DNA of 33,051 bases, taken from the NCBI RefSeq assembly GCF_006345805.1, contig NW_021832110.1:1-33051 (forward strand), written 5' to 3'. Position numbers and translations under genes: made by a program. Of this stretch, positions 220-23,970 are shown one piece after another. Each line of letters opens with the position of its first letter. Position 1 is the first letter of the stretch. Below the pieces are notes generated by a model, which saw only the letters and a program-made list of their open reading frames with translations, did not search any database and was not told the origin of the DNA. Origin of the DNA: Octopus sinensis (Eukaryota).

Positions 220-440
220 CGACATGGACGGACGCTAGTCAAATGGGCTCCACGTAAGTTGGTCATTTTGTACGTTGAAAATTGTTTATTGTGAAATATT
301 TTGTGTTTAAAAGTTGTGCAACAACATCCACTGTAAACCTTTGATAAATATCTACACAAAATTTTGCCCCTTGTGGGCAAAATTTAAAAGAAAAAATTCT
401 CATAGCCTTCGTGGTTTCATTTAGCCATTTTATTTCCAAA

Positions 441-2555
441 ATGGCCACTGGTCACCACGAGGCTGAGGTGCAAGTCAAGCGTGACGCAGAGGCAGAAAAA
501 CAGGATGCCCTGTTACCTTACGCTGAACCTGACAACTCCGCCACCATCAACATCGACAACAGCAACAAATACAAAACAAAGGTCGCAAGGCCAAGCACCG
601 TCAACACCATCAGTGAGTCCACCACCACCACCAACACCGACAACAACACCATGGCAGAATCTGCTACTAAAACTGCTATCCCTACTAAAGACGTCGCCAC
701 CAATAACAATACCAACATCACCATCACCGCCACCAAAGACCGTGCCGTCAATGCTACTAATACTACTAACACCACCGCCGTCACCAAGAACGACAATAAC
801 AACAACAACAACAACAACAACAACAACGACGACGACGACAACAACAATTCCCTTCAACCACTGCTCACTCCACCAACAAGTGAAAAAATAACGACGACAA
901 GCAAACGAAATGCCGAAATTTGCGCTAATGCAGGACTAAATTACGCAGGCAATTTTCCACCCCTTGCTAGTTGCATAATCAGTAACCACAAACCTACAAC
1001 CCACACCCCTGCCATCAACACCAACACCACCGGCAGTAACAACAATAACAAAACAACAACAAACTTCGCCGAGGCGATAAAAGAAAAGGTAACAAAAGTT
1101 TCGTTTACTACACAACAGATTAAAGATTGCAGAAACCTTATTACAAATCAAAACGGAAAAATACTCTTACACATACCTCAGCACATACTGAATGAGGAGA
1201 AAAAAAAGACAATTGTATATAAAATCACAAATAAAAAAACAAAAAGTCCAGAAAAGGCAAGCACAGACAAAGTCGAAAAGTGCTTACGCCCCATCTGGGG
1301 ATACAAGGATTGTGTGACTTGGGCGAACAAGTTCGCACACGTACAGGTGGTTTTTCAGAATGAAGAGTTGGCGAAGAAATTCTCAACGATAACCCTTCAT
1401 TCTGATGAACTAACGTTGACACCGAGTTACCTCGGCCAGAAGGTGACGAAAGTCATTATCAGTGGTGTCCCCCAAGTGACTACAACACTGTGGATTACAT
1501 CCGCCGTAACATCCGAAATGGAGGACATAAACATCCTAGATATCGGTGTTTCGGAAAACAAGGACTGGCTGGGAAAGAGAATAGAGTTCCTCTTCCACAT
1601 AAGTCAAGAGGACATAAATAAAATCCCCACCCACGTACATCTTGAGGATGGCCGCAAGTTATACGTAGTAGTCGAGGGCAGAAGGCCACGATGCTATACA
1701 TGTGGCAGTGAGGCACACCTCAAAAAGGAGTGCAAATCTGCCGCAAAATTACAACAACAACAACAGCCACAGGAAAAATCACAAAAGCCAGGATTATTGC
1801 CCACACCACAATATGGACAGCTAGTCAAGAAGCTGTATGCGGAAATGCAGGAAAAACAACAAAGAACAAGCCAACCCAACCAAACAACACCAACACCAGC
1901 GCCAAGAACAGAATCATCACCACCAACAACAAATAAACCAATTCCAACACCAAGAATAACAACGAAGAAGACAAGCACCAAGGATGTAGGAGAGACAATA
2001 ACCACAACAAACCCCCCAGCAACACCCTCCCCGCGCACCACAACAATATCTACAACCGCACAAATACACCCAGACGCTTTACCCTTGCCCCCTGCTGATT
2101 CGTCAGACTTTTCATCTAACGATGAAAGTTCGACAGAATGGCAAATAGCCACAGGGGGTAAAAGAAAAAGATCAAGAAAAACCAAACAAGAAATCGCAAC
2201 CAAAGCAGGGAGATACCTGAACCCTGAAAACTCCATACACAACAAAACAAGCACCAACACCACAAAAACAATGCTATCAGCGATAGACACAAAAGACTCC
2301 AAACTAATGGAGTACATCACAGGATACACAAACATTTGTGAAGATGACTTTAAAAATAGCAATCATCCACGCACTACACCACCCAAACACATCAAAATAC
2401 TACACATCACACAAACACAACACCACAAACTCAAAGCCCTCTTCCCAAATGCTGTAGGGGGTTTCCAGAAATATCTGTCCCAAAAACTATATAGAAACCT
2501 CCTCGAAGACACATCAAAGAACGAGGAAGCCAAAACTTTCGACACAAGTAAGTAA
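441..2555 (+). CDS. LINE ORF1, gag-like nucleic-acid-binding protein
   Basis: Open frame 411-2555, first in-frame ATG at 441. Zinc knuckle CYTCGSEAHLKKEC (1692-1733), a possible RRM-like segment upstream, low-complexity Asn/Thr and Pro/Thr tails, basic KRKRSRK motif. Confidence 0.85.
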   Translation: MATGHHEAEVQVKRDAEAEKQDALLPYAEPDNSATINIDNSNKYKTKVARPSTVNTISESTTTTNTDNNTMAESATKTAIPTKDVATNNNTNITITATKDRAVNATNTTNTTAVTKNDNNNNNNNNNNNDDDDNNNSLQPLLTPPTSEKITTTSKRNAEICANAGLNYAGNFPPLASCIISNHKPTTHTPAINTNTTGSNNNNKTTTNFAEAIKEKVTKVSFTTQQIKDCRNLITNQNGKILLHIPQHILNEEKKKTIVYKITNKKTKSPEKASTDKVEKCLRPIWGYKDCVTWANKFAHVQVVFQNEELAKKFSTITLHSDELTLTPSYLGQKVTKVIISGVPQVTTTLWITSAVTSEMEDINILDIGVSENKDWLGKRIEFLFHISQEDINKIPTHVHLEDGRKLYVVVEGRRPRCYTCGSEAHLKKECKSAAKLQQQQQPQEKSQKPGLLPTPQYGQLVKKLYAEMQEKQQRTSQPNQTTPTPAPRTESSPPTTNKPIPTPRITTKKTSTKDVGETITTTNPPATPSPRTTTISTTAQIHPDALPLPPADSSDFSSNDESSTEWQIATGGKRKRSRKTKQEIATKAGRYLNPENSIHNKTSTNTTKTMLSAIDTKDSKLMEYITGYTNICEDDFKNSNHPRTTPPKHIKILHITQTQHHKLKALFPNAVGGFQKYLSQKLYRNLLEDTSKNEEAKTFDTSK

Positions 2556-2605
2556 CTCTCTGTACTTTCATTTGTGTGTTTTAAAGCACACACCCCAATA
2601 GAATC

Positions 2606-5600
2606 ATGGTCAAGATTGGTTGTGTGAATGCGCGTGGCTTGGGGTATCCTTGGAAACAAGGATACCTCCTAAATGACATCAAGTCACATGATTTGGGAAT
2701 CATAGCCATAAGTGAGACCAGACTCCACGAGCCACGGGCCCTAAAGTCCATGTTTGGCGGACAGTTTAACATTTATTTCGCTCCTTGTCTGCCGAGGATG
2801 GGCGGTAGTGGCACCGCGGTACTTTTTCACAAGAGCCTGGATCTCGAAGTCAAGACGATATTCATAGACCCGGAGGGTAGACTGATCGTTCTGGATGTTG
2901 ACGGCAGCAATGGGTGCGCTTTTCGACTCGTATCAGTCTACGCACCGCCCTTAACAGGTCGGGCGGATTTCTTTCGACGTCTAGAAGTATTCTTGGGAAC
3001 GTCTCGTCCTTTACTCTTAGTGGGGGATTGGAATGCTACCTTGGACACGCATGTAGACTACGTGGGTAGAGACAGAAACAGAAGGGGATGCAAATGCCTC
3101 AGAGACCTGCTCAGACGATTCCAACTGTCTGACAGGTACCGACTCGACCACCCAAATGCACCAACGTGGACATGGAGCAACCGCAGTGGGTCGTCGAGAT
3201 CGTATCTAGATAGGATACTGTGTAGGACAGTAGACAAGGATAACTTAGGATGTCCACAATTCCACACAGTCAGCTACACGGATCACAAATTGGTGACGTG
3301 TACGCTAGACTTAGATAAGACACATAGACAGGGTCCTGGGTACTGGAAACTGAACGCATCATTCCCGTCCAGACAAGTTTTCAGAGACCGGATTAGCACA
3401 CTAGTAAAGAGGGCTTTGACGGGAGCCATCATCAACAACAAATGGTGGTTTGCCCTCAAGAGAGCAGTAAAAGCAGAAGCGATTAGGTACAGCAAAGCAC
3501 TAGCCATAGATAGAAATAGAGTAGAGGGTGAGCTAGTTAAGAAGCTAGAAGAGGCAATTAGAAGCGGCATCGCATCCGACGTTTTGGCGGCGAGGTTGGC
3601 CCTCGACCAACACTTCAACGCCAAACACGAAGGATGTGATGTCAGAGCTAGGATGCGTGCTCTAAGGAACGAAGGTGTTGGAGCCGCGAGAGAGGCCCGG
3701 GTGGCAGAGGCGCAACAGGGCAACAAAGCCACCATTCGGTCACTGGTAGATGAACAGGGGCGCGAATTGCTCGAGCCAAGTAAAATGTGTGAGGCCTTTC
3801 AGCAGCATTTTGCCCGACTGTTCGGGACGAGTGGAGGGCAAGAACGTAGGGTAGACTTCAGTGCCTACCTACATAGCCTGCCACGACTCTCGACAAGAAA
3901 GGCAGGGTGCTGCGAAGGTGCCATCACGGCGGCGGAAGTGCGGGAAGCGATGGCAGAATGCTCGAGGGACAAATCACCGGGTTTGGATGGTCTACCCTAC
4001 GAATTTTACTATTGTATGCCAGACTTGTTTGGAGACGTCTTGGCAGCGGTATACTGCAACTGGCAGCAAAACGGGAGCATACCCGGTTTTGTGAGTCGAG
4101 GAGCTGTAACGCTGCTGAAGAAAGATCCAAACAAGGGAAACATTATAGATAACTTTAGGCCAATCACTCTGCTCAATGCAGACCTGAAAATTTTGACAAA
4201 GGTGTTAGCCAAGAGGTTGGCGCTTGTCATGGAGAAACTGGTCGACAACGCACAAACGTGCGCCGTGCCGGGCCGGAGCATCCATGACAACCTCCATCTG
4301 ATGCGCTACATCATAGACAGGGTAGTTAACGAACCTGGCATGGGTGGGGCCCGGATCAACTTGGATCAATCGAAAGCCTTTGATAGGGTAGACCATCGAT
4401 ACTTGGAGGCAGTCCTGAGAGCGGCTGGTTTCGGTCCCGTCTTCCGCGGCTGGATAGCTGCCTTGTACAGGGGCATCCGTTCGGTAATTCGCGTAAATGT
4501 ACATCTATCGAGACCCTTCGACATTGCACGTTCGGTCCGTCAGGGATGCCCCCTCTCGGCGCTTCTATACGTATTGACTCTTGAGCCACTACTGCGGAAG
4601 CTGGCGACTCTGAGGGGCATCCCGCGAGAATTAGGATGCGGGATGAGCGTGTCTGCATACGCGGACGACGTCACCGTCATAGTGTCAAGCCACGAGCACA
4701 TCGAGCGGGTCGGCGAGACACTGAAAGACTACGAAGCGGTGACAGGAGCAAAAATCAACCGGGAAAAGTCAGTGGGCTTGCGGCTCGGCACCTGGAGAAG
4801 CAAGCCCATGCCGTCCACCAGTACCTCCGTCGTGGGACGCTGGACAGACGGCCCGGTTGAGTTTCTCGGGGTCTGGTTCGGTCCGGACCTCCAAATGGAG
4901 AAGAACTGGAACGAGATAACGAGTAGGGTGGTCACTCTCGCCCAGCAATGGGCCGAGAGGAAACTGTCCCTAAAAGGTCGGGCGGAGGTGGTGAACGCGT
5001 ACATCGCGTCCATCATCTACTACCGCCTGACCGTCGTACCTTGTCCCGACCCTACCATCACCAAACTAGAAAGCATCCTCTTCCGCTTCTTGTGGAAAGG
5101 ATGCGTCCCGATGGTCAGGCGATCCATTTGCTGTCAACACCCGTTAAAAGGAGGGCTGGGCATGCCGTGGTTGATGATGCGCAGACACGCGCTGAGACTG
5201 CGACATCTCCGGCTCTATGTAGACGACGGTGAACAGGTGTGGTCGCCGTTTGTGAGGCACGCATTCCCGCAACTCGTCTCCATGACCGAACTACAGTCGT
5301 GGATCAAAAAGAGGCCGAAGAAGGGCGAATGGCACCGCGAGTGTCGCGTTGCTCTCAAGCAACTCTGCCGTCCCGGGTCGACCTTGAGTGACTTCAACAC
5401 AACCAAAGCATTCTATAGGGGATTAGTGGAGGGGAGGTACGACGACGAGCTCGGGGCAAACCTGGGCGTCGACGAGGAATACCTGACCCGCCTGTTTCAA
5501 ACGACTTTCGGCCCGGGACCTATGGACAACTTCCAGAGATCCCTGGCCTGGCGGTGCTACCGAGAAGCGCTACCCGTTCGGGATAAGCTCTATAGGCATG

Positions 5601-6043
5601 GCTCGAGAAACACGGGGCCGACCTGCCCGAGATGCGGGCAGAACGACGAAACCGCTCTGCACGCAATCGTGCAGTGTCCAGCAATTTCCCACCTGTGGGC
5701 TTATGTCGAACAACTGCTGTCACGTGTGGGACGTGTCGGTTTATCAGCCGAGTCTATCGTTAATATCGTCACGCCTCCTTCCTTCAAACGGGAAGGAAGA
5801 GCTATTTTTATCATACTTGTGGCTATGGCGAAAGAATGTATCTGGTGGACGCGTCTGAAAGGATTAGAGACAAACACTTTCCTCTCTGGTCAATCTCTCA
5901 TCAACTTCTTCAAGTATCACTTGAAGAAAAAAGTGAGAGTAGAGAGGCAAGTTTTGTCTAGTGAATGTTTTAAAAAAAGATGGGTGAATGTAGCAAGGAT
6001 GGCACGTATGAATGACGAAGCCACCTTGACTATGATTCTATGA
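2606..6043 (+). CDS. LINE ORF2: APE endonuclease, reverse transcriptase and zinc-binding C-terminus (1145 aa)
   Basis: APE motifs NARGL, SETR, GDWN, YLDRI, TDHK; RT motifs PGLDGLP, FRPITLLNADLKI, DQSKAFDRV, QGCPLS, AYADD; C-terminal CPRCGQNDETALHAIVQC. No stops or frameshifts. Confidence 0.97.
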   Translation: MVKIGCVNARGLGYPWKQGYLLNDIKSHDLGIIAISETRLHEPRALKSMFGGQFNIYFAPCLPRMGGSGTAVLFHKSLDLEVKTIFIDPEGRLIVLDVDGSNGCAFRLVSVYAPPLTGRADFFRRLEVFLGTSRPLLLVGDWNATLDTHVDYVGRDRNRRGCKCLRDLLRRFQLSDRYRLDHPNAPTWTWSNRSGSSRSYLDRILCRTVDKDNLGCPQFHTVSYTDHKLVTCTLDLDKTHRQGPGYWKLNASFPSRQVFRDRISTLVKRALTGAIINNKWWFALKRAVKAEAIRYSKALAIDRNRVEGELVKKLEEAIRSGIASDVLAARLALDQHFNAKHEGCDVRARMRALRNEGVGAAREARVAEAQQGNKATIRSLVDEQGRELLEPSKMCEAFQQHFARLFGTSGGQERRVDFSAYLHSLPRLSTRKAGCCEGAITAAEVREAMAECSRDKSPGLDGLPYEFYYCMPDLFGDVLAAVYCNWQQNGSIPGFVSRGAVTLLKKDPNKGNIIDNFRPITLLNADLKILTKVLAKRLALVMEKLVDNAQTCAVPGRSIHDNLHLMRYIIDRVVNEPGMGGARINLDQSKAFDRVDHRYLEAVLRAAGFGPVFRGWIAALYRGIRSVIRVNVHLSRPFDIARSVRQGCPLSALLYVLTLEPLLRKLATLRGIPRELGCGMSVSAYADDVTVIVSSHEHIERVGETLKDYEAVTGAKINREKSVGLRLGTWRSKPMPSTSTSVVGRWTDGPVEFLGVWFGPDLQMEKNWNEITSRVVTLAQQWAERKLSLKGRAEVVNAYIASIIYYRLTVVPCPDPTITKLESILFRFLWKGCVPMVRRSICCQHPLKGGLGMPWLMMRRHALRLRHLRLYVDDGEQVWSPFVRHAFPQLVSMTELQSWIKKRPKKGEWHRECRVALKQLCRPGSTLSDFNTTKAFYRGLVEGRYDDELGANLGVDEEYLTRLFQTTFGPGPMDNFQRSLAWRCYREALPVRDKLYRHGSRNTGPTCPRCGQNDETALHAIVQCPAISHLWAYVEQLLSRVGRVGLSAESIVNIVTPPSFKREGRAIFIILVAMAKECIWWTRLKGLETNTFLSGQSLINFFKYHLKKKVRVERQVLSSECFKKRWVNVARMARMNDEATLTMIL

Positions 6044-6462: not shown

Positions 6463-6475
6463 TATCTATCTATCA

Positions 6476-6516
<41 letters not shown>

Positions 6517-6521
6517 CCTAC

Positions 6522-6567
<46 letters not shown>
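6463..6567. repeat. (TATC)n microsatellite, 3' flank of the LINE
   Basis: TATC run starting immediately after AATAAAGAAACA, in the same orientation as the 5' run. Confidence 0.95.
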
Positions 6568-6569
<2 letters not shown>

Positions 6570-6957
6570 ACACATGTATATACATAGTTGAAGTTTACAG
6601 AAAAATAAAAGACGAAAGATATATGAACAAGGTGTGTATTAGTTTGACACTCCGGAAAGTGTGAAAGGGCTTTAAGTTTCGAGCCTACGATCTTCAAAAG
6701 TAAAGAAAATGAGGAAATCACAGAAGTTCAAAAAGGATTAAATGTTCTAGTGTATTGGAGGGATATTTCATTAAAAGATGAGTCCCGTGAGATCCATAAG
6801 TATATCCAGTGGCAGTCGGGTAGAGTGCAGATATGTAGAATCGGAGAGGTGCAGAAAGATCAGGCAGTAGTAAGTCCAATATGTAGGTATATAAAGCAGG
6901 ATAAAACAGGTGCGACCACTTGAGCTGACAATACATTCATATATATATATATATATA

Positions 6958-9900
6958 AATTTATATATAGAGGGCATTATACATACATGCCAGGAGGCAT
7001 TCTACATACACGCCATACGCTAAGAGGGACAATCAGTCATTTCTACCAAAAATATTACTAATCCCACCGAATGCAATTTTTCAAAGAAAAGACATTTAAA
7101 ATATATAGACCTGTATCACAGTGATTTCATACTTACGTAATCATCAGCAGGCCTGAATATACTATAAATAAACAACGACCCCGCTTCGCTTAAGCCGATC
7201 AGCTAACTGATCAACATCAACGAGGCACATGGTTGAGTTTATATATACTATATCCGGATGAATGGCAAACTTTTACGAATTGCATTTCGGGAGAGGAAAG
7301 TTTTTTCGGATAAAAATTTAGCAATTAAGGACAACTACTTAATAAGGAAAACTTAACAAGAAATTGTCAGGTAGATAGCGTAAAAAACTCATAAGAGAAA
7401 AAATTTCGAAAATAATTATTTCTTATTGAACATATTAATTTATATATAGAGGGCATTATACATACATGCCAGGAGGCATTCTACATACACGCCATACGCT
7501 AAGAGGGACAATCAGTCATTTCTACTACAAAAATATTACTAATCCCACCGAATGCAATTTTTCAAAGAAAGACATTTAAAAATATATAGACCTGTATCAC
7601 AGTGATTTCATACTTACGTAATCATCAGCAGGCCTGAATATACTATAAATAAACAACGACCCCGCTTCGCTTAAGCCGATCAGCTAACTGATCAACATCA
7701 ACGAGGCACATGGTTGAGTTTATATATACTATATCCGGATGAATGGCAAACTTTTACGAATTGCATTTCGGGAGAGGAAAAGTTTTTTCGGAATAAAAAT
7801 TTAGCATTAAGGACAACTACTTAATAAGGAAAACTTAACAAGAAATTGTCAGGTAGATAGCGTAAAAACCTCATAAGAGAAAAAATTTCGAAAATAATTA
7901 TTTCTTATTGAACATATTAATTTATATATAGAGGGCATTATACATACATGCCAGGAGGCATTCTACATACACGCCATACGCTAAGAGGGACAATCAGTCA
8001 TTTCTACCAAAAATATTACTAATCCCACCGAATGCAATTTTTCAAAGAAAGACATTTAAAAATATATAGACCTGTATCACAGTGATTTCATACTTACGTA
8101 ATCATCAGCAGGCCTGAATATACTATAAATAAACAACGACCCCGCCTTCGCTTAAGCCGATCAGCTAACTGATCAACATCAACGAGGCACATGGTTGAGT
8201 TTATATATACTATATCCGGATGAATGGCAAACTTTTACGAATTGCATTTCGGGAGAGGAAAAGTTTTTTCGGAATAAATTTAGCAATTAAGGACAACTAC
8301 TTAATAAGGAAAACTTAACAAGAAATTGTCAGGTAGATAGCGTAAAAACTCATAAGAGAAAAAATTTCGAAAATAATTATTTCTTATTGAACATATTAAT
8401 TTATATATAGAGGGCATTATACATACATGCCAGGAGGCATTCTACATACACGCCATACGCTAAGAGGGACAATCAGTCATTTCTACCAAAAATATTACTA
8501 ATCACCGAATGCAATTTTTCAAAGAAAGACATTTAAAATATATAGACCTGTATCACAGTGATTTCATACTTACGTAATCATCAGCAGGCCTGAATATACT
8601 ATAAATAAACAACGACCCCGCTTCGCTTAAGCCGATCAGCTAACTGATCAACATCAACGAGGCACATGGTTGAGTTTATATATACTATATCCGGATGAAT
8701 GGCAAACTTTTACGAATTGCATTTCGGGAGAGGAAAAGTTTTTTCGGAATAAAAATTAGCAATTAAGGACAACTACTTAATAAGGAAAACTTAACAAGAA
8801 ATTGTCAGGTAGATAGCGTAAAAACCTCATAAGAGAAAAAATTTCGAAAATAATTATTTCTTATTGAACATATTAATTTATATATAGAGGGCATTATACA
8901 TACATGCCAGGAGGCATTCTACATACACGCCATACGCTAAGAGGGACAATCAGTCATTTCTACCAAAATATTACTAATCCCACCGAATGCAATTTTTCAA
9001 AGAAAGACATTTAAAAATATATAGACCTGTATCACAGTGATTTCATACTTACGTAATCATCAGCAGGCCTGAATATACTATAAATAAACAACGACCCCGC
9101 TTCGCTTAAGCCGATCAGCTAACTGATCAACATCAACGAGGCACATGGTTGAGTTTATATATACTATATCCGGATGAATGGCAAACTTTTACGAATTGCA
9201 TTTCGGGAGAGGAAAAGTTTTTTCGGAATAAAAATTTAGCAATTAAGGACAACTACTTATAAGGAAACTTAACAAGAAATTGTCAGGTAGATAGCGTAAA
9301 AACCTCATAAGAGAAAGAATTTCGAAAATAATTATTTCTTATTGAACATATTAATTATATATAGAGGGCATTATACATACTGCCAGGAGGCATTCTACAT
9401 ACACGCCATACGCTAAGAGGGACAATCAGTCATTTCTACCAAAAATATTACTAATCCCACCGAATGCATTTTTCAAAGAAAGACATTTAAAAATATATAG
9501 ACCTGTATCACAGTGATTTCATACTTACGTAATCATCAGCAGGCCTGAATACTATAAATAAACAACGACCCCGACGCTTCGCTTAAGCCGATCACTAACT
9601 GATCAACATCAACGAGGCACATGGTTAGTTTATATATACTATATCCGATGAATGGCAAACTTTTACGAATTGCATTTCGGGAGAGGAAAAGTTTTTTCGG
9701 AATAAAAATTTAGCAATTAAGGACAACTACTTAATAAGGAAAACTTAACAAGAAATTGTCGGTAGATAGCGTAAAAACCTCATAAGAAAAAAATTTCGAA
9801 AATAATTATTTCTTATTGAACATATTAATTTATATATAGAGGGCATTATACATACATGCCAGGAGGCATTCTACATACACGCCATACGCTAAGAGGGACA

Positions 9901-10279
9901 ATCAGTCATTTCTACCAAAAATATTACTAATCCCACCGAATGCAATTTTTCAAAGAAGACATTTAAAAATAATAGACCTGTATCACAGTGATTTCATACT
10001 TACGTAATCATCAGCAGCCTGAATATACTAATAAAACAAACGACCCCGCCCTTCGCTTAAGCCGATCAGCTAACTGATCAACATCAACGAGGCACATGGT
10101 TGAGTTTATATATACTATATCCGGATGAATGGCAAACTTTTACGAATTGCATTTCGGGAGAGGAAAAGTTTTTTCGGAATAAAAATTTAGCAATTAAGGA
10201 CAACTACTTAATAAGGAAAACTTAACAAGAAATTGTCAGGTAGATAGCGTAAAAACCTCATAAGAGAAAAAATTTCGAA
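6958..10279 (-). repeat. Left arm of ~481-bp tandem array (about 6.9 units), hammerhead-sense on the minus strand
   Basis: Unit AATTTATATATAGAGGGCATT... recurs about every 475-481 bp; no ORF of 60 aa or more in the ORF track; copies differ mostly by 1-nt indels. Confidence 0.95.
7107..7154 (-). ncRNA. Type I hammerhead ribozyme motif; further minus-strand copies at 7588-7635, 8068-8115, 8544-8591, 9023-9070, 9499-9546 and 9974-10020
   Basis: Reverse complement of the plus-strand motif; identical in six copies, with one G missing from stem I in the 9974-10020 copy. Confidence 0.83.
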
Positions 10280-12546
10280 GCAGGGTCGTTGTTTATTTAT
10301 AGTATATTCAGGCCTGCTGATGATTACGTAAGTATGAAATCACTGTGATACAGGTCTATATATTTTTAAATGTCTTTCTTTGAAAAATTGCATTCGGTGG
10401 GATTAGTAATATTTTTGGTAGAAATGACTGATTGTCCCTCTTAGCGTATGGCGTGTATGTAGAATGCCTCCTGGCATGTATGTATAATGCCCTCTATATA
10501 TAAATTAATATGTTCAATAAGAAATAATTATTTTCGAAATTTTTTCTCTTATGAGGTTTTTACGCTATCTACCTGACAATTTTTGTTAAGTTTTCCTTAT
10601 TAAGTAGTTGTCCTTAATTGCTAAATTTTTATTCCGAAAAAACTTTTCCTCTCCCGAAATGCAATTCGTAAAAGTTTGCCATTCATCCGGATATAGTATA
10701 TATAAACTCAACCATGTGCCTCGTTGATGTTGATCAGTTAGCTGATCGGCTTAAGCGAAGCGGGGTCGTTGTTTATTTATAGTATATTCAGGCCTGCTGA
10801 TGATTACGTAAGTATGAAATCACTGTGATACAGGTCTATATATTTTTAAATGTCTTTCTTTGAAAAATTGCATTCGGTGGGATTAGTAATATTTTTGGTA
10901 GAAATGACTGATTGTCCCTCTTAGCGTATGGCGTGTATGTAGAATGCCTCCTGGCATGTATGTATAATGCCCTCTATATATAAATTATATGTTCAATAAG
11001 AAATAATTATTTTCGAAATTTTTTCTCTTATGAGGTTTTTACGCTATCTACCTGACAATTTCTTGTTAAGTTTTCCTTATTAAGTAGTTGTCCTTTTGCT
11101 AAATTTTTATTCCGAAAAAACTTTTCCTCTCCCGAAATGCAATTCGTAAAAGTTTGCCATTCATCCGGATATAGTATATATAAACTCAACCATGTGCCTC
11201 CTCGTTGATGTTGATCAGTTAGCTGATCGGCTTAAGCGAAGCGGGGTCGTTGTTTATTTATAGTATATTCAGGCCTGCTGATGATTACGTAAGTATGAAA
11301 TCACTGTGATACAGGTCTATATATTTTTAAATGTCTTTCTTTGAAAAATTGCATTCGGTGGGATTAGTAATATTTTTGGTAGAAATGACTGATTGTCCCT
11401 CTTAGCGTATGGCGTGTATGTAGAATGCCTCCTGGCATGTATGTATAATGCCCTCTATATATAAATTAATATGTTCAATAAGAAATAATTATTTTCGAAA
11501 TTTTTTCTCTTATGAGGTTTTTACGCTATCTACCTGACAATTTCTTGTTAAGTTTTCCTTATTAAGTAGTTGTCCTTAATTGCTAAATTTTTATTCCGAA
11601 AAAACTTTTCCTCTCCCGAAATGCAATTCGTAAAAGTTTGCCATTCATCCGGATATAGTATATATAAACTCAACCATGTGCCTCGTTGATGTTGATCAGT
11701 TAGCTGATCGGCTTAAGCGAAGCGGGGTCGTTGTTTATTTATAGTATATTCAGGCCTGCTGATGATTACGTAAGTATGAAATCACTGTGATACAGGTCTA
11801 TATATTTTTAAATGTCTTTCTTTGAAAAATTGCATTCGGTGGGATTAGTAATATTTTTGGTAGAAATGACTGATTGTCCCTCTTAGCGTATGGCGTGTAT
11901 GTAGAATGCCTCCTGGCATGTATGTATAATGCCCTCTATATATAAATTAATATGTTCAATAAGAAATAATTATTTTCGAAATTTTTTCTCTTATGAGGTT
12001 TTTACGCTATCTACCTGACAATTTCTTGTTAAGTTTTCCTTATTAAGTAGTTGTCCTTAATTGCTAAATTTTTATTCCGAAAAAACTTTTCCTCTCCCGA
12101 AATGCAATTCGTAAAAGTTTGCCATTCATCCGGATATAGTATATATAAACTCAACCATGTGCCTCGTTGATGTTGATCAGTTAGCTGATCGGCTTAAGCG
12201 AAGCGGGGTCGTTGTTTATTTATAGTATATTCAGGCCTGCTGATGATTACGTAAGTATGAAATCACTGTGATACAGGTCTATATATTTTTAAATGTCTTT
12301 CTTTGAAAAATTGCATTCGGTGGGATTAGTAATATTTTTGGTAGAAATGACTGATTGTCCCTCTAGCGTATGGCGTGTATGTAGAATGCCTCCTGGCATG
12401 TATGTATAATGCCCTCTATATATAAATTAATATGTTCAATAAGAAATAATTATTTTCGAAATTTTTTCTCTTATGAGGTTTTTACGCTATCTACCTGACA
12501 ATTTCTTGTTAAGTTTTCCTTATTAAGTAGTTGTCCTTAATTGCTA
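10276..12546 (+). repeat. Right arm of the same array in inverted orientation (about 4.7 units), hammerhead-sense on the plus strand
   Basis: Exact reverse complement of the left-arm unit; motif spacing 480, 481, 481, 481 bp; ends in (TA)n at about 12546. Confidence 0.95.
10310..10357 (+). ncRNA. Type I hammerhead ribozyme motif; further plus-strand copies at 10790-10837, 11271-11318, 11752-11799 and 12233-12280
   Basis: AGGCCTG-CTGATGA-T-TAC-GTAA-GTA-T-GAA-ATCAC-T-GTGAT-A/CAGGTCT: stem I 7 bp (one G-U), canonical CUGAUGA and GAAA core, stem II 3 bp plus GNRA loop, stem III 5 bp, predicted cleavage after A10350. Confidence 0.85.
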
Positions 12547-12630
12547 TATATATATATAATATATAATATATATATACATACATAAATATATATGTATATC
12601 TATATAAGTGTATGTGTGTATAAAGTCAAT

Positions 12631-13153: not shown

Positions 13154-13516
13154 TGTGCTTACACACACATACATATATATATATTTATATATAACTAAGA
13201 GACAGACCCTCCGTAAATTAATCCAATTAATAATGAAAGATATTATCTATAATAAAATATAAATATAATTATATTATTAATAATATACTAAAACATACTA
13301 TACTAAATTATGCCCATTAAATTAACGAGGCGCGTTTCGTAACCATATATTTAAATCGACTTAATCAAAATTGATAATATGAAAAATGAATATTTCTTCG
13401 AACCAATGACACATATCTACTCTTCAGGTCTAAATAGCATAAAATAAATTTGCAACATAAGTGAAGACATCGAAATTAACCCCTTAATTCCATATATATA
13501 TATATATATATATATA

Positions 13517-13918
13517 TAACTGAAATGCGTTTTTACAGCTTGGATTGCTTTCAATGCCACTACATCCCGTCCGATTCGCTCCAAAATTTACAGGGACATG
13601 TAGAAAGAAGTGACGATGCTCGTGGGCTACCTTAGAAATCCCTAGCTTAAAAGGTGTGGTTGCTAGGGTACATCTTCCTCACTCACGCTATTTCCTCCTT
13701 TCCCTCTCTTACTTCCCTTCATTAATAACTTTGAGAATGCCACTCCCGTTATTTAATGTATTCCCCTCAACTCCATTTCACTTTCCCTTTATAAGTTCGT
13801 CAGGCGGCTTTCTTTGATGTATCTGTTTGCATTCATAGGGAGAATTATCATCGCTACCAACAACACACAATCATGAGAACAAATATTATGAATCAGATAT
13901 TCTTGCGTTCATTTATAT
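13517..13918 (+). repeat. ~400-bp dispersed repeat, copy 1 (possibly a Helitron-derived 5' segment)
   Basis: Reverse complement of 22097-22502 along its whole length with scattered substitutions. Confidence 0.85.
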
Positions 13919-15288: not shown

Positions 15289-15601
15289 ATCATCATCATC
15301 ATCAACATCGTCCAACGTCCCTTTTCCGTGCTAGCACGGGTTGGATAGTTTGACCGGGGTCTGGGAAGCCAGGAGGCTGCACCAGGCTCCAGTCTGATCT
15401 GGCAGTGTTTCTACAGGTGGATGATCTTCCTAACGCCAACCACTCTGTGAGTGTAGTGGGTGCTTTTTTCGTGCCGCCGGCACAGGTGCCTGGAGGGCTC
15501 GCAGCGGCAATGATCGGTTGGTGCTTTTTACGTGCCACCGGCACAGAAGCAAGTCAAGGCGGCGCTGCAATCGGCCGCGTTCGGATGGTGCTTGTTACAT
15601 G
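15289..15601 (-). mobile_element. RTE-type LINE 3' end or SINE-like repeat with (GAT)n tail
   Basis: GC-rich block starting with (CAT)n on the plus strand; internal repeat GGTGCTTTTT(T/A)CGTGCC(G/A)CCGGCAC. Family assignment is from recall. Confidence 0.5.
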
Positions 15602-16899: not shown

Positions 16900-19200
16900 A
16901 TGATTAAAGAGTCAGAAAGCATACCATGCTTTCGTCATAAGCCATTCATTGCTTTGAATGAACAGAGGCTAATGAACCGTGTTAGGTCTAATAGTGCCTG
17001 AATAAAAAGATTATTTGTAAGGGAGGTAAGTAGTTCTGGATTTTGTGCAGTATGGTTAGATATAGAATTTGAATCTGAATTTTGTAAGGAATGTATAGTG
17101 GTTTATGGTGTTAATTGAAGGGATAGTAGTGTTCTGTATTAAGTTGTGTCTTAGTATTCAGTTGGGGAAGATATTTATTGATAAAAATTGCCTAATTATT
17201 CAACCTTTGTTGCATTGATGTGTTCTGTGAACATTGATTAATGTGGAAAATTTGGAAATTAGGATTAAGATTCCTAGCACACCTTTCTACGTGTTCACTA
17301 AGCTGTCACTGTCTGTATTGTGGTTGGGGAATTTGTTTCTTGTGAACTGTGGTTCTTCAACGGAGTGATATTCCTGTTTGTCTTATATAGTGGTTACCAC
17401 ATCCTAAGCATGTCATGGTATAGATCAGATTTTACGAGTGCCAGGTGCAATTTGAATTGATCTTAAATATTTCCTCTTGTTTGAAGTGGATTTCTGAATC
17501 CTCCAAAAGGTTGGGACATGTTCCACGGGTGAGACGACCACATATTTTCTCTTTTGGAGCTGTTGTTAGTAGATATAGTCTTGCGCTGGTTAATTGTCTT
17601 TCAATGAATTCGGTTGTAGTTTGCTTTTTTAAATTTTGTATGAGCTTAAAATTTCCTTCGTTGTTTTGTCTCCTGTGAGGATGGGAAGATTTTGGCTGAT
17701 AATATTGAAGGCTTCGTTGTTTCTAGGGTTATGTGTGGAAATCTACGGGAGTATTTCTTAAGTCTGTTTTAGTATTTCGGCTGGCATGCTTTAATATTTG
17801 TATATCTATTTCCTTAGCTCTTTTAATGTCTTTTAGTTAGTGTTGATCTAATTTCAAGGAGTCTTATTCACGAGTATATGTATCCGAAAATATGGTACAG
17901 ATTATTTTCGCTAGATTAAAAGGTGTATTAATTTTTATGTGTTTGGGGTGTCAAACAATAGGTATTGTCTAGAATCTGTGGGTTTATAAGAGAAGTCTGA
18001 TTCTATTTGGCTGTTAACTATTTTAAATAAGATGTCCAGAAAAGGGAGATGTTTACTGTTGTGTTCCATAGTGATTTGTATATTGCTATGTATGTTGTTA
18101 AGCATTACTTTCAAATCAAGGAGTTTGTCCATGCTGTATTTCCAAAGTATGAAGCAATCATCCAAATACCTCATCCAGTTCTCCTATAAATATCAATTAA
18201 AAGAGGCGCCATAATTTTCTAGTGATGATTGGTATAACTTCAGTTCTAGGTAACCCATTTCAACGTTTGAAATCACTGGAGCAGCTCTGGTTTCCATTGC
18301 AATTCCACATTTTTGTCGATAGTAAGTTGTGTCGAACATGAAATAGTTGTTCAGCAGGATGAATTTGAGTGCTTCGATTATGATTCTGTGGTTTATGCAT
18401 CCTGAGATCTCTTCTGCGTATTTTTCAGTGACTGCTTCTATACCATAGTCGTGTGGGATATTGGTGTACAGATTCACCACATCGAAAGATACCAGCAGCG
18501 TTCCTTCCTTTACTGTATTCGGGAGGTGGTTCGGCATGTCTAGGTCATCCCTGATAAAGCTTTTCACATATTTTTAAAAAACGTTTTGAGTAAGATGTCG
18601 AGGAAGTTGCTCAAATAGTGGGTTTCACAAGAAGGGCCACCTATGAGAGGTCTCAGTTTGAGGTCAGTAGGGGGAGGGACATTAATGCATAGGCTTGTAG
18701 AGATTTTGCAGGCTTCAGAAATGTGTGGATTTTTATGTATTTTGGGTAATCCGTAGAATAGACTAAGACTGTATTTAAAATTGGGTAAAAAGTCTATTTC
18801 AAGGTTAGTGCGACCCTTTCTATGAATTTGGAGTAAGGAGGGCAAGTTTTTCAGTGTTTACTGTGGGTGGTTATGTATTAATTTCTCATAGTAAATATTA
18901 CTTTCCAACATGGAATGTATTAAATTTGTGTAGTATTCTGTATTCATCACTACTACCGCACTTCCGTTGTCGGCTTCTTTGGAATACGTTGAATTTGGAA
19001 TTTATGAGGCAAAAGTATTGGTGTAGAGTTTAGCCAGCGTTCGTAGATTTCTGCCTTGTGGTTGTTTTTAATCGTATTCCAGAAAGAAAAGTTTCTGGCT
19101 TTACGGTTTTTCATTCCATATGTGGATAAGGCGGCTTTTGATAGATAGTGTGGAGGGATTGCTATCTTGTGTATCATCTATTGGAGGATTTACCAGTAGC
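16900..19200 (-). pseudogene. Decayed Penelope-like element (RT plus GIY-YIG endonuclease)
   Basis: Broken frames read FYGLPKIHK, LRPLIGG, LVSFDVVNLYTNIP, YYRQKCGIAM, RYLDDCF, LPFLDI, YKPTDS; a CLGCGNHYI-type GIY-YIG remnant lies at about 17150-17420. Confidence 0.88.
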
Positions 19201-22096: not shown

Positions 22097-22515
22097 ATAT
22101 AAATGAACGCAATGAATATCTGATTCATAATATTTGTTCTCATGATTGTGTGGTGTTTGTAGCGATGATAATTCTCCCTATGACTGCCGACAGATACATC
22201 AGAGAAAGCCGTCTGACGACCTTATAAAGGGAAAGTGAAAGGGAGTTGAGGGGAATACATTAAATAACGGGAGTGGACATTGTCAACGTTATGAATGAAG
22301 GGGAGTAAGAGAGGGAAAGGAGGAAATAACGTGAGTGAGGATGATGGCCCCTAGCAACCACACCTTTTAAGCTAGGGATTTCTAAGGTAGCCCACGAGCA
22401 TCGTCACCTCATTCTACATGTCCCTGTAAATTTTGGAGCGAATAGGACGGGTCGTAGTGGCATTGAAAGCAACCCAAGGGGTAAAAACGCATTTCAGTTA
22501 TATATATATAGTAGA
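22097..22515 (-). repeat. ~400-bp dispersed repeat, copy 2, beginning TCTACTATATA on the minus strand
   Basis: Inverted copy of 13517-13918; the minus-strand start A/TCTACTATATATATATAACTG resembles a Helitron 5' end. Confidence 0.8.
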
Positions 22516-23079: not shown

Positions 23080-23970
23080 TAATATATTGACCGGTTTCGA
23101 TATCGCTATTCATGATATTATATTTTACTTATTTGAATATATATTTTTTCTTAGAAAGAAATTTTGTCCATGTTGTGTTTGATGAAATTCACGAGTGAAT
23201 GACTTCACAAGTGGATAAATAAAGGGAGGTTATTGGTTGTCGTTATTCATGTTATTGTTGTGGGTAAGGGAGATAACGGTTCAGCTTTCGGTAATGGGTG
23301 CGGATTATATAGGAGTACAGACAGACAAGTTTCAAAAACCTAGTTTAGTAGTCGGTTTATGTACAGTGATGTATTCGTGAATTGAAATATATAAAAAGAT
23401 AACAGTTGGTTATGCGTGGATATTAAGGCGTTTTCTTGTATTTTCAATGAAAAAAGTTTCTTTATTTAAACGCTCTAGTTGAGAGATTGCGTCTTTGCAC
23501 TGGTAAAAAGGGAAGAGTGTGAAATTTGGTTTGATGTTACCTGCACATGTTTCTATATGTTCACTGAAAGGAATTTGTCTGTATTCCGGGAAACGGATTT
23601 GCCCTTTATTTAGAGTGGTTCTCTTTCTCAAGGTCATACTCGTTTGTCCAATATAGTGGTGTCCTCAACCCGAGCAGGTTATTACATGAATTAGGTTCTC
23701 AGATGCACAAGTGAAACTAGTTTTAATTGTGAACCTCTGTCCTTGTTTGAAAAGTAAGTCCGAGCCTTCAAGCAGGTTGGGGCAGGTTTCACAGTTTGAG
23801 CGTCCATATTTTTCAACCGTTGGTTTTTTGGTTGCTTTGTAAAGCTTCGCGTTTGTTAGTAGTCTGGATCCCATCAGACACATCGATAAAGTTGTGTGTG
23901 AGTAAAGATTTTGAGTGTCATCTGACATGTAGTTATGCTGCCATCTAGTTGGGGAACGAATAAAATACAA
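23080..23970 (-). pseudogene. Second Penelope-like remnant: GIY-YIG endonuclease and 3' region
   Basis: CETCPNL...FTCASENLIHVITCSG, then LRKRTTLNKGQI...PFSEHIETC...FFIEN; homologous to the 17150-17420 remnant. Confidence 0.8.

What the first reader, a model, noticed from the sequence alone, without database searches (positions are those of the whole stretch)
6958..12546. The 481-bp 'satellite' is a hammerhead-ribozyme tandem array: candidate retrozyme producing ~481-nt self-cleaved, possibly circular RNAs
Seen: every unit contains AGGCCTG CTGATGA TTACGTAAGTAT GAAA TCACTGTGA TA CAGGTCT, which has the full type I hammerhead topology (stem I 7 bp, CUGAUGA, stem II, GAAA, stem III, UA cleavage site). 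There are 12 copies (7 minus, 5 plus), identical except for one 1-nt deletion, and the array has no ORF of 60 aa or more. Established: tandem non-coding repeats with one minimal type I hammerhead per monomer are known as newt satellite 2, schistosome Sm-alpha, cave cricket pDo500 and metazoan non-LTR retrozymes; their multimeric transcripts self-cleave to monomers that can circularise. Inference: this is such an element in a probable cephalopod genome, and I do not recognise this particular family. Predicted monomers are 10351-10830, 10831-11311, 11312-11792 and 11793-12273.
Basis: partly seen in the sequence, partly recalled or inferred. Interest (0 to 1): 0.93.

Follow-up and report, generated by a model that had tools for sequence, protein, structure and literature searches.

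The report
Hammerhead-ribozyme tandem repeat in an octopus genome
A 481-bp non-coding repeat in what is almost certainly an octopus genome carries one complete hammerhead self-cleaving RNA motif per unit and looks like a new family of the known animal "retrozyme" class, probably pasted into a TA microsatellite by reverse transcription; self-cleavage is untested.

Summary
Twelve copies of the 48-nt motif lie in two head-to-head arms (6951-10279 minus, 10276-12545 plus); 11 are identical. Cut-to-cut monomers are 475-481 nt, with no ORF of 60 aa or more.

The motif has every invariant hammerhead core base, a 7-bp helix I and a near-palindromic helix III. A descriptor of this stringency found 0 hits in 48 Mb of composition-matched random sequence. 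Its one flaw, U·U at the base of helix II, also occurs in the cleavage-proven axolotl HHR_Amex2. Two copies co-fold into a double hammerhead, as coral and axolotl controls do.

The monomer is AT-rich and far more self-paired than shuffles (z = -5.2). A decayed Penelope-like element lies 5-11 kb away, with closest relatives in Octopus.

Against: Rfam hammerhead models give no hit, my four-seed model scores only 13.5 bits, and the copies are too alike to test conservation.

New here: both array ends abut (TA)n, the arms join 5'-to-5' at a CGAA microhomology, and an independent 5'-truncated copy in O. bimaculoides shares the same 3' boundary and layout. This points to retro-insertion.

Verdict: a new member of a known kind. 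Cleavage and circular RNA remain untested.

The parts
6951..10279 (-). Left arm of the array. Hammerhead-sense is on the minus strand. It holds 6 full monomers (475-481 nt) plus two partial units. Read in hammerhead sense, it runs from monomer position ~183 at the central junction to position ~161 at its outer 3' end.
   Evidence: TRF period 479, 7.0 copies; cut-to-cut monomers; end mapping by blastn against the consensus
10276..12545 (+). Right arm of the array. Hammerhead-sense is on the plus strand. It holds 4 full monomers (480-481 nt) plus two partial units, running from monomer position ~407 at the junction to position ~273 at its outer 3' end.
   Evidence: TRF period 481, 4.7 copies, 99%
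10276..10279 (.). Central 5'-to-5' junction of the two arms, with a CGAA microhomology. The arms are offset by ~224 nt of the monomer, so this is not a symmetric fold-back.
   Evidence: Sequence read; mapping
10310..10357 (+). Hammerhead copy. Predicted cleavage after A10350 (GAUA|CAGG).
10790..10837 (+). Hammerhead copy. Predicted cleavage after 10830.
11271..11318 (+). Hammerhead copy. Predicted cleavage after 11311.
11752..11799 (+). Hammerhead copy. Predicted cleavage after 11792.
12233..12280 (+). Hammerhead copy. Predicted cleavage after 12273.
7107..7154 (-). Hammerhead copy. Predicted cleavage between 7114 and 7113 on the minus-strand RNA.
7588..7635 (-). Hammerhead copy. Predicted cleavage between 7595 and 7594.
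8068..8115 (-). Hammerhead copy. Predicted cleavage between 8075 and 8074.
8544..8591 (-). Hammerhead copy. Predicted cleavage between 8551 and 8550.
9023..9070 (-). Hammerhead copy. Predicted cleavage between 9030 and 9029.
9499..9546 (-). Hammerhead copy. Predicted cleavage between 9506 and 9505.
9974..10021 (-). Hammerhead copy with a 1-nt deletion in the 5' strand of helix I (AGGC-UG), which weakens helix I. Predicted cleavage between 9981 and 9980.
6933..6950 (.). (TA)9 tract directly abutting the left outer end of the array. Presumed to be the left half of the target microsatellite.
   Evidence: Sequence read
12546..12606 (.). TA-rich microsatellite directly abutting the right outer end of the array. 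Presumed to be the right half of the target microsatellite.
   Evidence: TRF row 12545-12606; sequence read
17435..18857 (-). Context: a decayed Penelope-like element. The RT lies in three broken frames (18857->17938), followed by the start of a GIY-YIG endonuclease with a CX2-5CxxC linker (~17560->17435). This element family is the proposed mobiliser of animal retrozymes.
   Evidence: RVT_1 E 3.8e-5; octopus relatives, some with RVT_1 + GIY-YIG
23413..23970 (-). Context: a second GIY-YIG endonuclease fragment of the same element family, lying upstream as a partial tandem copy.
   Evidence: BLASTP to the GIY-YIG C-terminus of P0140, 39% identity, E 2e-24

Best explanation
The array is a new family of metazoan non-LTR retrozyme in an octopod genome. 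The parts below are marked as shown or inferred.

Shown: each 481-nt unit encodes one type I hammerhead of the canonical animal architecture. Helix I is 7 bp and continues after a UC bulge into 7 A-U pairs. Helix II occupies 4 positions under a GUAA loop. Helix III is short and near-palindromic (AUCAC-U-GUGAU).

Inferred: multimeric transcripts of an arm fold so that two neighbouring ribozymes pair through helix III into a double hammerhead. They cut at GAUA|CAGG and release 475-481-nt monomers with 5'-OH and 2',3'-cyclic phosphate ends. A host RtcB-type tRNA ligase then circularises the monomers into a highly self-paired RNA.

Inferred from anatomy: the genomic copy arose by target-primed reverse transcription of a multimeric or circular RNA at a (TA)n microsatellite. 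One cDNA was primed at monomer position ~273. A second, inverted cDNA was primed from the other nick, inside the monomer's own UAUAUAUA stretch (a twin-priming-like event). The two were joined 5'-to-5' at a CGAA microhomology. The reverse transcriptase and endonuclease were most likely supplied by a Penelope-like element.
For: Core and topology: all invariant positions are present (C3-A9, G12-A14, A15.1-U16.1, H17 = A, G2.1-C1.1), and the stems are 7, 3 (plus the U.U) and 4 bp. The same descriptor recovers four cleavage-validated retrozyme hammerheads taken from the supplement of PMC7229834. It finds 0 hits at this stringency in 48 Mb of random sequence.

Precedent for the flaw: axolotl HHR_Amex2 also has a U.U at the base of helix II, H17 = A and a CAC/GUG helix III. 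It cleaves 22% in 1 h as a monomer and much better as a dimer.

Dimer mode: helix III alone is worth -0.2 kcal/mol, against -10 to -12 as an intermolecular helix. The two-copy MFE is the double hammerhead (-28.3 against 2 x -10.3), as it is for the coral and Amex2 controls.

Retrozyme features: tandem repeat with at least 2 consecutive complete units; GC 33%; no ORF, LTR, PBS or PPT; hammerhead MFE -10.3 kcal/mol, below the -5 threshold; circular monomer MFE -118 against -90.5 +/- 5.3 for shuffles (z = -5.2, 0 of 200 shuffles as low). A canonical EN+ Penelope-like remnant lies in the same window.

Insertion footprint: (TA)n lies at both outer ends, the arms are 5'-truncated and inverted, and the junction has a microhomology. 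This matches the partial-tandem-plus-inverted-5'-truncated-copy structure and the (TA)n preference described for Penelope-like elements. An independent 76%-identical copy in O. bimaculoides (L002 ~17013-17265) has the same 3' boundary within ~3 nt, the same (TA)n target and the same small inverted arm.
Against: Rfam 15 hammerhead models give no match at gathering thresholds, nor at E<=10 on 1.2 kb or on 86 nt.

A covariance model built from the four validated ribozymes ranks the candidate first in the window, but at only 13.5 bits (E about 0.07, roughly calibrated). An unrelated hairpin in the monomer scores 11 bits.

Helix II is the weakest of any comparator: three pairs, two of them A-U, and no G10.1-C11.1. 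As a single motif, the hammerhead fold is 2 kcal/mol above the MFE, and helix III has about 1.5% ensemble probability.

The 12 copies differ almost only by 1-nt indels (30 indel events; substitutions in 2 of 10 monomers). The absence of variants in the motif (1 event against ~5 expected, P about 0.03) therefore has little weight.

No diverged hammerhead-bearing copy of this family was found; the O. bimaculoides relative lacks that part.

The monomer has no sequence similarity to the Penelope-like remnant in the window. There are no expression data.
Confidence: 0.7

Rival explanations
1. It is an ordinary tandem satellite whose unit happens to carry a hammerhead-like string, or the decayed remnant of one. 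The RNA does not self-cleave, and the array grew by unequal crossing-over or replication slippage.
For: No Rfam hammerhead hit. My own covariance model is only marginal. There is a U.U at 10.1/11.1 with an A-U-rich 3-bp helix II, and the hammerhead fold is not the single-motif MFE. The near-identity of the copies gives no evidence of selection. In a genome of several Gb, a handful of chance descriptor hits are expected (extrapolated).
Against: The chance expectation per window is 0.001 or less. The motif falls exactly once per unit of a non-coding, AT-rich, strongly self-paired tandem repeat, which is the known habitat of such ribozymes. Every deviation has a precedent that has been shown to cleave, namely Amex2. 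None of the four validated controls has the hammerhead fold as its monomer MFE either. The array has the footprint of retro-insertion rather than in-place expansion.
Confidence: 0.17
2. The repeat is not an independent retrozyme. Instead it is a run of pseudo-LTRs, or a 3' fragment, of a Penelope-like element, and its hammerhead is the element's own.
For: Canonical EN+ Penelope-like elements carry hammerheads in their pseudo-LTRs and form tandem and inverted insertions at microsatellites. A remnant of such an element lies in the window. A 2026 preprint derives retrozymes from pseudo-LTRs.
Against: Twelve units carry no RT or EN coding sequence. There is no sequence similarity between the monomer and the rest of the window, including the element remnant. 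The hammerhead architecture is canonical (helix I 7 bp, helix II 4 positions), not the PLE-minimal type (helix II 7-8 bp, helix I 4-5 bp).
Confidence: 0.06
3. The head-to-head arrangement of the two arms is an assembly or long-read chimera artefact, and the real locus is a single direct array. This rival concerns only the arrangement, not the ribozyme.
For: Nearly all differences between copies are 1-nt indels, which is typical of long-read consensus noise. Tandem and inverted repeats are hard to assemble, as PMC8557442 notes for Penelope-like element insertions.
Against: The junction is asymmetric: the arms start at monomer positions 183 and 407, and the arm lengths are 3.3 and 2.3 kb. A missed-adapter fold-back would be symmetric. 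The arms also have different indel loads. A related copy in an independent assembly of another species shows the same inverted-plus-direct layout.
Confidence: 0.1

Closest known systems
Axolotl non-LTR retrozyme Rtz353 with HHR_Amex2 (Cervera & de la Pena 2020, PMC7229834)
   Same: Type I hammerhead, one per unit of a non-coding tandem repeat. Both have a U.U mismatch at the base of helix II, H17 = A, a palindromic CAC/GUG helix III, and a two-copy MFE that is a double hammerhead.
   Different: Helix II is G-C rich with a 5-nt loop in the axolotl, against U-A, A-U, C-G with a GUAA tetraloop here. The unit is 353 nt against 481 nt. Helix I is 6 bp against 7 bp. There is no sequence similarity outside the core. 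The host is a vertebrate, and ~60,000 copies are documented there, whereas copy number here is unknown.
Mytilus galloprovincialis retrozyme Mg353 (same paper)
   Same: Same phylum (Mollusca). AT-rich repeat of about 350-390 bp with a type I hammerhead and a palindromic helix III. It lacks most of the archetypal loop1-loop2 contact bases and still cleaves (about 0.1 per min), and it is abundant as circular RNA.
   Different: The mussel motif has G10.1-C11.1 and a GUC cleavage site. The unit is shorter and unrelated in sequence.
Newt satellite 2, Schistosoma Sm-alpha and Dolichopoda pDo500 satellites
   Same: The classic tandem repeats with one type I hammerhead per unit. The newt ribozyme depends on dimers through a weak palindromic helix III (from PMC7229834 and PMC4209133).
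   Different: They are different sequence families. I did not compare their sequences directly, because none was available from a tool.
Minimal hammerheads of Penelope-like element pseudo-LTRs (Cervera & de la Pena 2014, PMC4209133)
   Same: Dimer-dependent type I motifs in retroelement repeats, found in genomes that also hold retrozymes. The insertion style is the same: tandem plus an inverted 5'-truncated copy, at microsatellites.
   Different: The PLE type has helix II of 7-8 bp, helix I of 4-5 bp and little or no helix III. The candidate has helix I of 7 bp, helix II of 4 positions and a 4-5 bp helix III, and it lies in an ORF-less 481-bp unit.
O. sinensis ~455-bp element at L004 722-1176 (found here)
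   Same: Octopod host, similar size, flanked by (TA)n on both sides, and strongly self-complementary. Its hammerhead has the same helix III design and cleavage site (GAAA-UCGG-U-CCGA-UA| against GAAA-UCAC-U-GUGA-UA|).
   Different: It is a single copy, not a tandem. It has no BLAST similarity to the 481-nt unit. Its helix II is long and interrupted and its helix I is 5 bp, which is PLE-like. Its 75-nt inverted termini also fit a TA-targeting MITE.

Membership tests
Hammerhead ribozyme, type I | Invariant core: C3 U4 G5 A6 N7 G8 A9; G12 A13 A14; A15.1-U16.1; H17 not G | tested here: met
   CUGAUGA ... GAAA ... UA| is present in all 12 copies
Hammerhead ribozyme, type I | Three helices around the core, with helix I open (5' and 3' ends in helix I) | tested here: met
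   Helix I is 7 bp, extendable by 7 A-U pairs after a UC bulge. Helix II is 3 bp plus U.U under a GUAA loop. Helix III is 4 bp with a 3-nt loop, or 10 bp when intermolecular
Hammerhead ribozyme, type I | G10.1-C11.1 closing pair of helix II (near-universal in natural hammerheads; from general knowledge of the family) | tested here: not met
   U.U at 10.1/11.1. The same deviation occurs in the cleavage-proven axolotl HHR_Amex2, so it does not disqualify the motif.
Hammerhead ribozyme, type I | Match to curated covariance models (Rfam hammerhead families) | tested here: not met
   No hammerhead family is listed at gathering thresholds, nor at E<=10 on 1.2 kb or 86 nt. Rfam also misses the O. sinensis L004 motif.
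Hammerhead ribozyme, type I | Match to a model built only from validated retrozyme hammerheads | tested here: inconclusive
   Best hits in the window, full length and in the correct register, but only 13.5 bits (E about 0.07); an unrelated hairpin scores 11 bits
Hammerhead ribozyme, type I | Loop 1 / loop 2 tertiary contacts | not testable with these tools
   A UC bulge in helix I and a GUAA loop 2 are placed where such contacts occur. No covariation or 3D evidence is available.
Hammerhead ribozyme, type I | Site-specific Mg-dependent self-cleavage | not testable with these tools
   This needs in vitro transcription of monomer and dimer constructs.
Metazoan non-LTR retrozyme (PMC7229834; bioRxiv 10.64898/2026.07.22.740005) | Short tandem repeat with one type I hammerhead per unit and at least 2 consecutive complete units | tested here: met
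   There are 5 and 7 consecutive units. The 481-bp unit is above the 150-450 bp range of the 2020 paper but inside the 51-972 bp range of the 2026 survey.
Metazoan non-LTR retrozyme (PMC7229834; bioRxiv 10.64898/2026.07.22.740005) | GC below 50%; no LTR, PBS, PPT or coding capacity | tested here: met
   GC is 33%. Units are head-to-tail with no ORF of 60 aa or more.
Metazoan non-LTR retrozyme (PMC7229834; bioRxiv 10.64898/2026.07.22.740005) | Hammerhead MFE below -5 kcal/mol (working 'active' criterion of the 2026 survey) | tested here: met
   MFE is -10.3 kcal/mol for the 48-nt motif; the hammerhead fold itself is -8.3.
Metazoan non-LTR retrozyme (PMC7229834; bioRxiv 10.64898/2026.07.22.740005) | Monomer RNA predicted to be highly self-paired | tested here: met
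   Circular MFE is -118 against -90.5 +/- 5.3 for shuffles (z = -5.2); 63% of bases are paired.
Metazoan non-LTR retrozyme (PMC7229834; bioRxiv 10.64898/2026.07.22.740005) | Host genome also carries Penelope-like elements | tested here: met
   An RT plus GIY-YIG remnant lies in the same window, and relatives occur across Octopus genomes.
Metazoan non-LTR retrozyme (PMC7229834; bioRxiv 10.64898/2026.07.22.740005) | Sequence relationship of the unit to a PLE pseudo-LTR | tested here: inconclusive
   There is no similarity to the decayed element in the window. No intact octopod pseudo-LTR was available to compare.
Metazoan non-LTR retrozyme (PMC7229834; bioRxiv 10.64898/2026.07.22.740005) | Expressed as monomer-length linear and circular RNA | not testable with these tools
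   No transcriptome data were searchable by nucleotide sequence.
PLE-type minimal hammerhead | Long helix II (7-8 bp), short helix I (4-5 bp), helix III absent or 1 bp; located in a pseudo-LTR flanking an RT-EN ORF | tested here: not met
   Helix I is 7 bp, helix II has 4 positions and helix III is 4-5 bp. There is no ORF in or next to the units.

The most novel reading that the evidence does not exclude
The locus may preserve the integration footprint of an animal retrozyme, which has so far only been hypothesised. The footprint would be two cDNA arms copied from a multimeric or circular RNA, primed from the two nicks of a (TA)n target. One arm starts at a fixed internal site (monomer position ~273). 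The other starts in the unit's own UAUAUAUA stretch. The arms are joined 5'-to-5' by microhomology. The same 3' boundary, target type and inverted-arm layout recur in an independent, 76%-identical copy in O. bimaculoides. If this holds generally, it would show that retrozymes integrate by Penelope-like (twin-priming-type) target-primed reverse transcription from a defined initiation site.
Probability: 0.3. Interest if true: 0.65.

Novelty: new member of a known kind. Interest (0 to 1): 0.45.

Why it matters
Hammerhead-bearing tandem repeats (non-LTR retrozymes) are known from cnidarians, mussels, insects and amphibians, and give rise to very abundant small circular RNAs. I found no description of one in cephalopods, whose genomes are large and rich in repeats. 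If this family is active, it would add a 481-nt self-cleaving or circular RNA species to octopus transcriptomes. It would also be a second natural example, besides axolotl Amex2, of a working hammerhead with a U.U at the base of helix II. Finally, its insertion architecture offers a concrete, genome-wide testable handle on how retrozymes are mobilised and by which reverse transcriptase, which is still an open question.

Tried and rejected
Things that led nowhere:
- Rfam at gathering thresholds on the whole window, at E<=10 on 1.2 kb, and at E<=10 on 86 nt gave no hammerhead family. It also gave none for the O. sinensis motif.
- A covariance model from four validated retrozyme hammerheads gave only 13.5 bits and discriminated poorly.
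- Conservation within the window could not be tested, because the copies differ almost only by 1-nt indels.
- Searches for relatives found nothing: hammerhead pattern scans of metagenome and viral contigs; a scan with the stretch conserved with O. bimaculoides; a 54-codon antisense ORF used as a probe of 5.8 billion gene calls; and blastn of the unit against the rest of the window, which gave only low-complexity hits.
- About 200 kb of octopod loci were fetched around Penelope-like genes. They yielded one partial relative and no hammerhead-bearing copy of this family.
- Organism: an exact look-up of LINE ORF2 found nothing on record. Its best relative lies in assembly GCA_024449705.1, whose species I could not resolve.

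Rejected as chance:
- CUGACGA...GAAA strings at 22213 (+) and 13782 (-), inside a 400-bp dispersed repeat. Helix III is 1 bp, and the second copy breaks helices I and II without compensation.

Left unresolved:
- A hammerhead-like hit at L005 11175-11217, inside the end of a Penelope-like ORF.

Other ideas rejected:
- A DNA-transposon or MITE origin of the window array, because its two termini are not inverted copies of each other (monomer positions 161 and 273).
- A shared 3' tail with the adjacent LINE, because there is no similarity.

Full report
OBSERVATION. The 48-nt string AGGCCTGCTGATGATTACGTAAGTATGAAATCACTGTGATACAGGTCT occurs 12 times: 7 on the minus strand and 5 on the plus strand. Eleven copies are exact, and the copy at 9974-10021 has a 1-nt deletion in helix I. 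None is expected by chance. Tandem Repeats Finder reports two adjacent arrays, 6953-10279 (period 479, 97% matches) and 10276-12546 (period 481, 99%). Measured from one predicted cleavage site to the next, the monomers are 480-481 nt on the plus arm and 475-481 nt on the minus arm. No ORF of 60 aa or more lies inside the array, and the longest stop-free stretch is 54 codons.

IS IT A HAMMERHEAD? Read as RNA, the motif is helix I AGGCCUG/CAGGUCU (7 bp, one G-U), then CUGAUGA, then helix II U-UAC-GUAA-GUA-U, then GAA, then helix III A-UCA-CUG-UGA-U, then A17 and the cut. All invariant core positions are present.

I wrote an explicit type I descriptor. In the window it finds only the satellite copies, even at lax thresholds. 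In 48 Mb of composition-matched random sequence it finds 0 hits at the candidate's stringency, 1 hit at stems 6/3/3 and 5 hits at 5/3/3. That is at most about 0.001-0.007 per window. The same descriptor recovers all four retrozyme hammerheads whose cleavage was demonstrated experimentally: coral Amil224, mussel Mg353, and axolotl Ax353 and Ax330. Their sequences come from the supplement of PMC7229834.

The candidate's one departure from the consensus is a U.U at positions 10.1/11.1 with a weak three-pair helix II. Axolotl HHR_Amex2 has the same U.U, the same H17 = A and a CAC/GUG helix III. It cleaves 22% in an hour as a single unit and much better as a dimer.

DIMER MODE. As a lone hairpin, helix III is worth -0.2 kcal/mol, and the hammerhead fold (-8.3) lies 2 kcal/mol above the single-motif MFE. 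However, AUCACUGUGAU is a near-palindrome. Two copies co-fold with an MFE that is exactly a double hammerhead (-28.3 against 2 x -10.3), with a 10-bp intermolecular helix III. The validated coral and Amex2 ribozymes behave the same way, and none of the four controls has the hammerhead fold as its monomer MFE. So the thermodynamic weakness is typical of the class. PMC4209133 describes canonical animal type I hammerheads as having helix I of about 6 bp, helix II of about 4 bp, and a short palindromic helix III that is active as a dimer in tandem repeats. It describes Penelope-type minimal hammerheads as having a long helix II and a short helix I. The candidate is of the canonical type.

COUNTER-EVIDENCE. 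Rfam 15 lists no hammerhead family at gathering thresholds, at E<=10 on 1.2 kb, or at E<=10 on 86 nt. A covariance model I built from the four validated sequences alone ranks the candidate copies first in the window, full length and in register. But the score is only 13.5 bits (E about 0.07, roughly calibrated), and an unrelated hairpin scores 11 bits. The field itself detects these motifs with descriptors followed by inspection, not with covariance models. Rfam also misses a second octopus hammerhead. Variation among the copies is almost entirely 1-nt indels: 30 indel events, with substitutions in only 2 of 10 monomers. The lack of variants in the motif (1 event against about 5 expected, P about 0.03) therefore carries little weight.

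RETROZYME FEATURES. The unit has 33% GC and lacks ORFs and LTR-type features. As a circle it is much more self-paired than shuffled sequence: -118 against -90.5 +/- 5.3 kcal/mol, z = -5.2, with 0 of 200 shuffles as low. It meets the working definition used in the 2026 survey: a TRF array, a type I descriptor hit, MFE below -5 kcal/mol, and at least 2 consecutive complete units. Its length falls within that survey's 51-972 bp range, though above the 150-450 bp of the 2020 paper.

CONTEXT AND ORGANISM. Directly upstream lies a full-length APE-type LINE (ORF1 411-2555; ORF2 2606-6043 with Exo_endo_phos, RVT_1 and zf-RVT domains). On the minus strand at 18857-17435 there is a decayed reverse transcriptase followed by the start of a GIY-YIG endonuclease. 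A second endonuclease fragment lies at 23970-23413. The stitched RT scores RVT_1 at E 3.8e-5. Its best relatives are annotated in Octopus sinensis (75-76% identity), O. bimaculoides, Argonauta hians and O. vulgaris, followed by bivalves, and several of these relatives combine RVT_1 with GIY-YIG. The endonuclease fragment aligns to the C-terminal GIY-YIG domain of one such protein (39% identity, E 2e-24). So the window comes from an octopod and contains a canonical EN+ Penelope-like element remnant. That element family co-occurs with, and is proposed to mobilise, animal retrozymes. The 481-nt unit itself shows no similarity to that remnant or to anything else in the window.

HOW THE ARRAY GOT THERE. 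The two arms are head to head. In hammerhead sense, the left arm runs from monomer position ~183 at the centre to ~161 at its outer end. The right arm runs from ~407 to ~273. They meet at 10276-10279 with a CGAA microhomology. Both outer ends run straight into TA microsatellite, (TA)9 at 6933-6950 and a TA tract at 12546-12606, so the empty site would be a single TA tract. The left arm's outer end lies in the unit's own TATATATA stretch.

This is the structure PMC8557442 describes for Penelope-like insertions: 5'-truncated partial tandems, often with an adjacent inverted 5'-truncated copy, and a preference for (TA)n. It also fits the published model of oligomeric cDNA copied from circular retrozyme RNA.

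Scanning about 200 kb of octopod DNA fetched around related genes found one relative of the unit, in O. bimaculoides (L002). It is a 76%-identical copy of monomer positions ~84-273, and its 3' end coincides within about 3 nt with the outer end of the window's right arm. It abuts (TA)n and is preceded by a short inverted arm ending near position 148. Its flanks are unrelated to the window, so it is an independent insertion. It does not reach the hammerhead part of the unit. With only two loci, this is suggestive rather than conclusive.

OTHER OCTOPUS HAMMERHEADS. The same scan found a hammerhead at L004 890-948 (O. sinensis). It lies in the middle of a ~455-bp element flanked by (TA)n on both sides, with 75-nt inverted termini. 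Its helix III (AUCGG-U-CCGAU, followed by the cut after UA) has the same design as the candidate's, with two pairs changed on both sides. Its helix II is long and its helix I is 5 bp. About 0.03 such hits would be expected by chance in that much sequence. A weaker hit lies inside the end of a Penelope-like ORF in O. vulgaris (L005 11175-11217). Octopod genomes therefore seem to hold several hammerhead-bearing element families.

VERDICT. This is a new family of a known class (non-LTR retrozyme), with a canonical, dimer-type hammerhead that has an Amex2-like helix II. Self-cleavage and circular RNA are predictions; I estimate about a 0.65 chance that dimers cleave in vitro. I found no paper combining hammerheads or retrozymes with cephalopods. 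However, the class is reported 'from molluscs to arthropods', so the find is expected rather than surprising. The most interesting by-product is the insertion footprint, which could make the mobilisation mechanism testable across the genome.

Noticed in passing
window 411-6043 (+), with (TATC)n at 134-218 and 6463-6569: An apparently intact, full-length APE-type LINE. ORF1 is 714 aa with a weak zf-CCHC match. ORF2 is 1145 aa with Exo_endo_phos, RVT_1 and zf-RVT domains. It is bracketed by (TATC)n microsatellites and ends ~380 bp upstream of the array. Its best relative (70% aa identity) lies in assembly GCA_024449705.1, whose species I could not resolve. Read-through from it would produce antisense left-arm RNA followed by sense right-arm RNA, which could fold back into a hairpin of 2 kb or more.
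   Followed up: partly
window 17435-18857 (-) and 23413-23970 (-): A decayed canonical EN+ Penelope-like element: an RT in three broken frames, then an endonuclease with a CX2-5CxxC linker, and a second endonuclease fragment ~5 kb upstream as a partial tandem. No hammerhead core was found next to either piece.
   Followed up: yes
window 13507-13902 and 22114-22510: A ~400-bp dispersed repeat present as an inverted pair (93-94% complementary) 8.2 kb apart, enclosing the Penelope-like RT remnant. It contains a CUGACGA...GAAA string, which I judged to be chance.
   Followed up: partly
L004 722-1176 (O. sinensis GCA_006345805.1, CM016861.1): A ~455-bp element lying between (TA)13 and (AT)41. It has 75-nt inverted termini (~92% identical), an internal perfect hairpin and a central hammerhead (890-948) that Rfam does not detect. 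It is either a solo retrozyme-like insertion or a TA-targeting MITE that carries a hammerhead.
   Followed up: partly
L005 11175-11217 (O. vulgaris GCA_951406725.2, OX597815.1): A hammerhead-descriptor hit with helix I of 5 bp, an A.A mismatch plus 3 bp in helix II, and the palindromic helix III AGUAUACU. It lies at the very end of a Penelope-like ORF, ~200 bp before a TA tract. It could be the element's own ribozyme or chance.
   Followed up: no
window 6951-12545: Copy-to-copy differences are almost all 1-nt indels. There are about 25 events in the six left-arm monomers against 4 in the four right-arm monomers, and 8 of 10 monomers have no substitutions. This suggests long-read consensus noise or a very young array, and an unexplained asymmetry between the arms.
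   Followed up: partly
window 15292-15483; L002 16819-17009: A SINE-like dispersed repeat ending in (GAT)n or (ATC)n is shared at 83% identity between the window and O. bimaculoides. In L002 it lies directly next to the retrozyme-related fragment.
   Followed up: no
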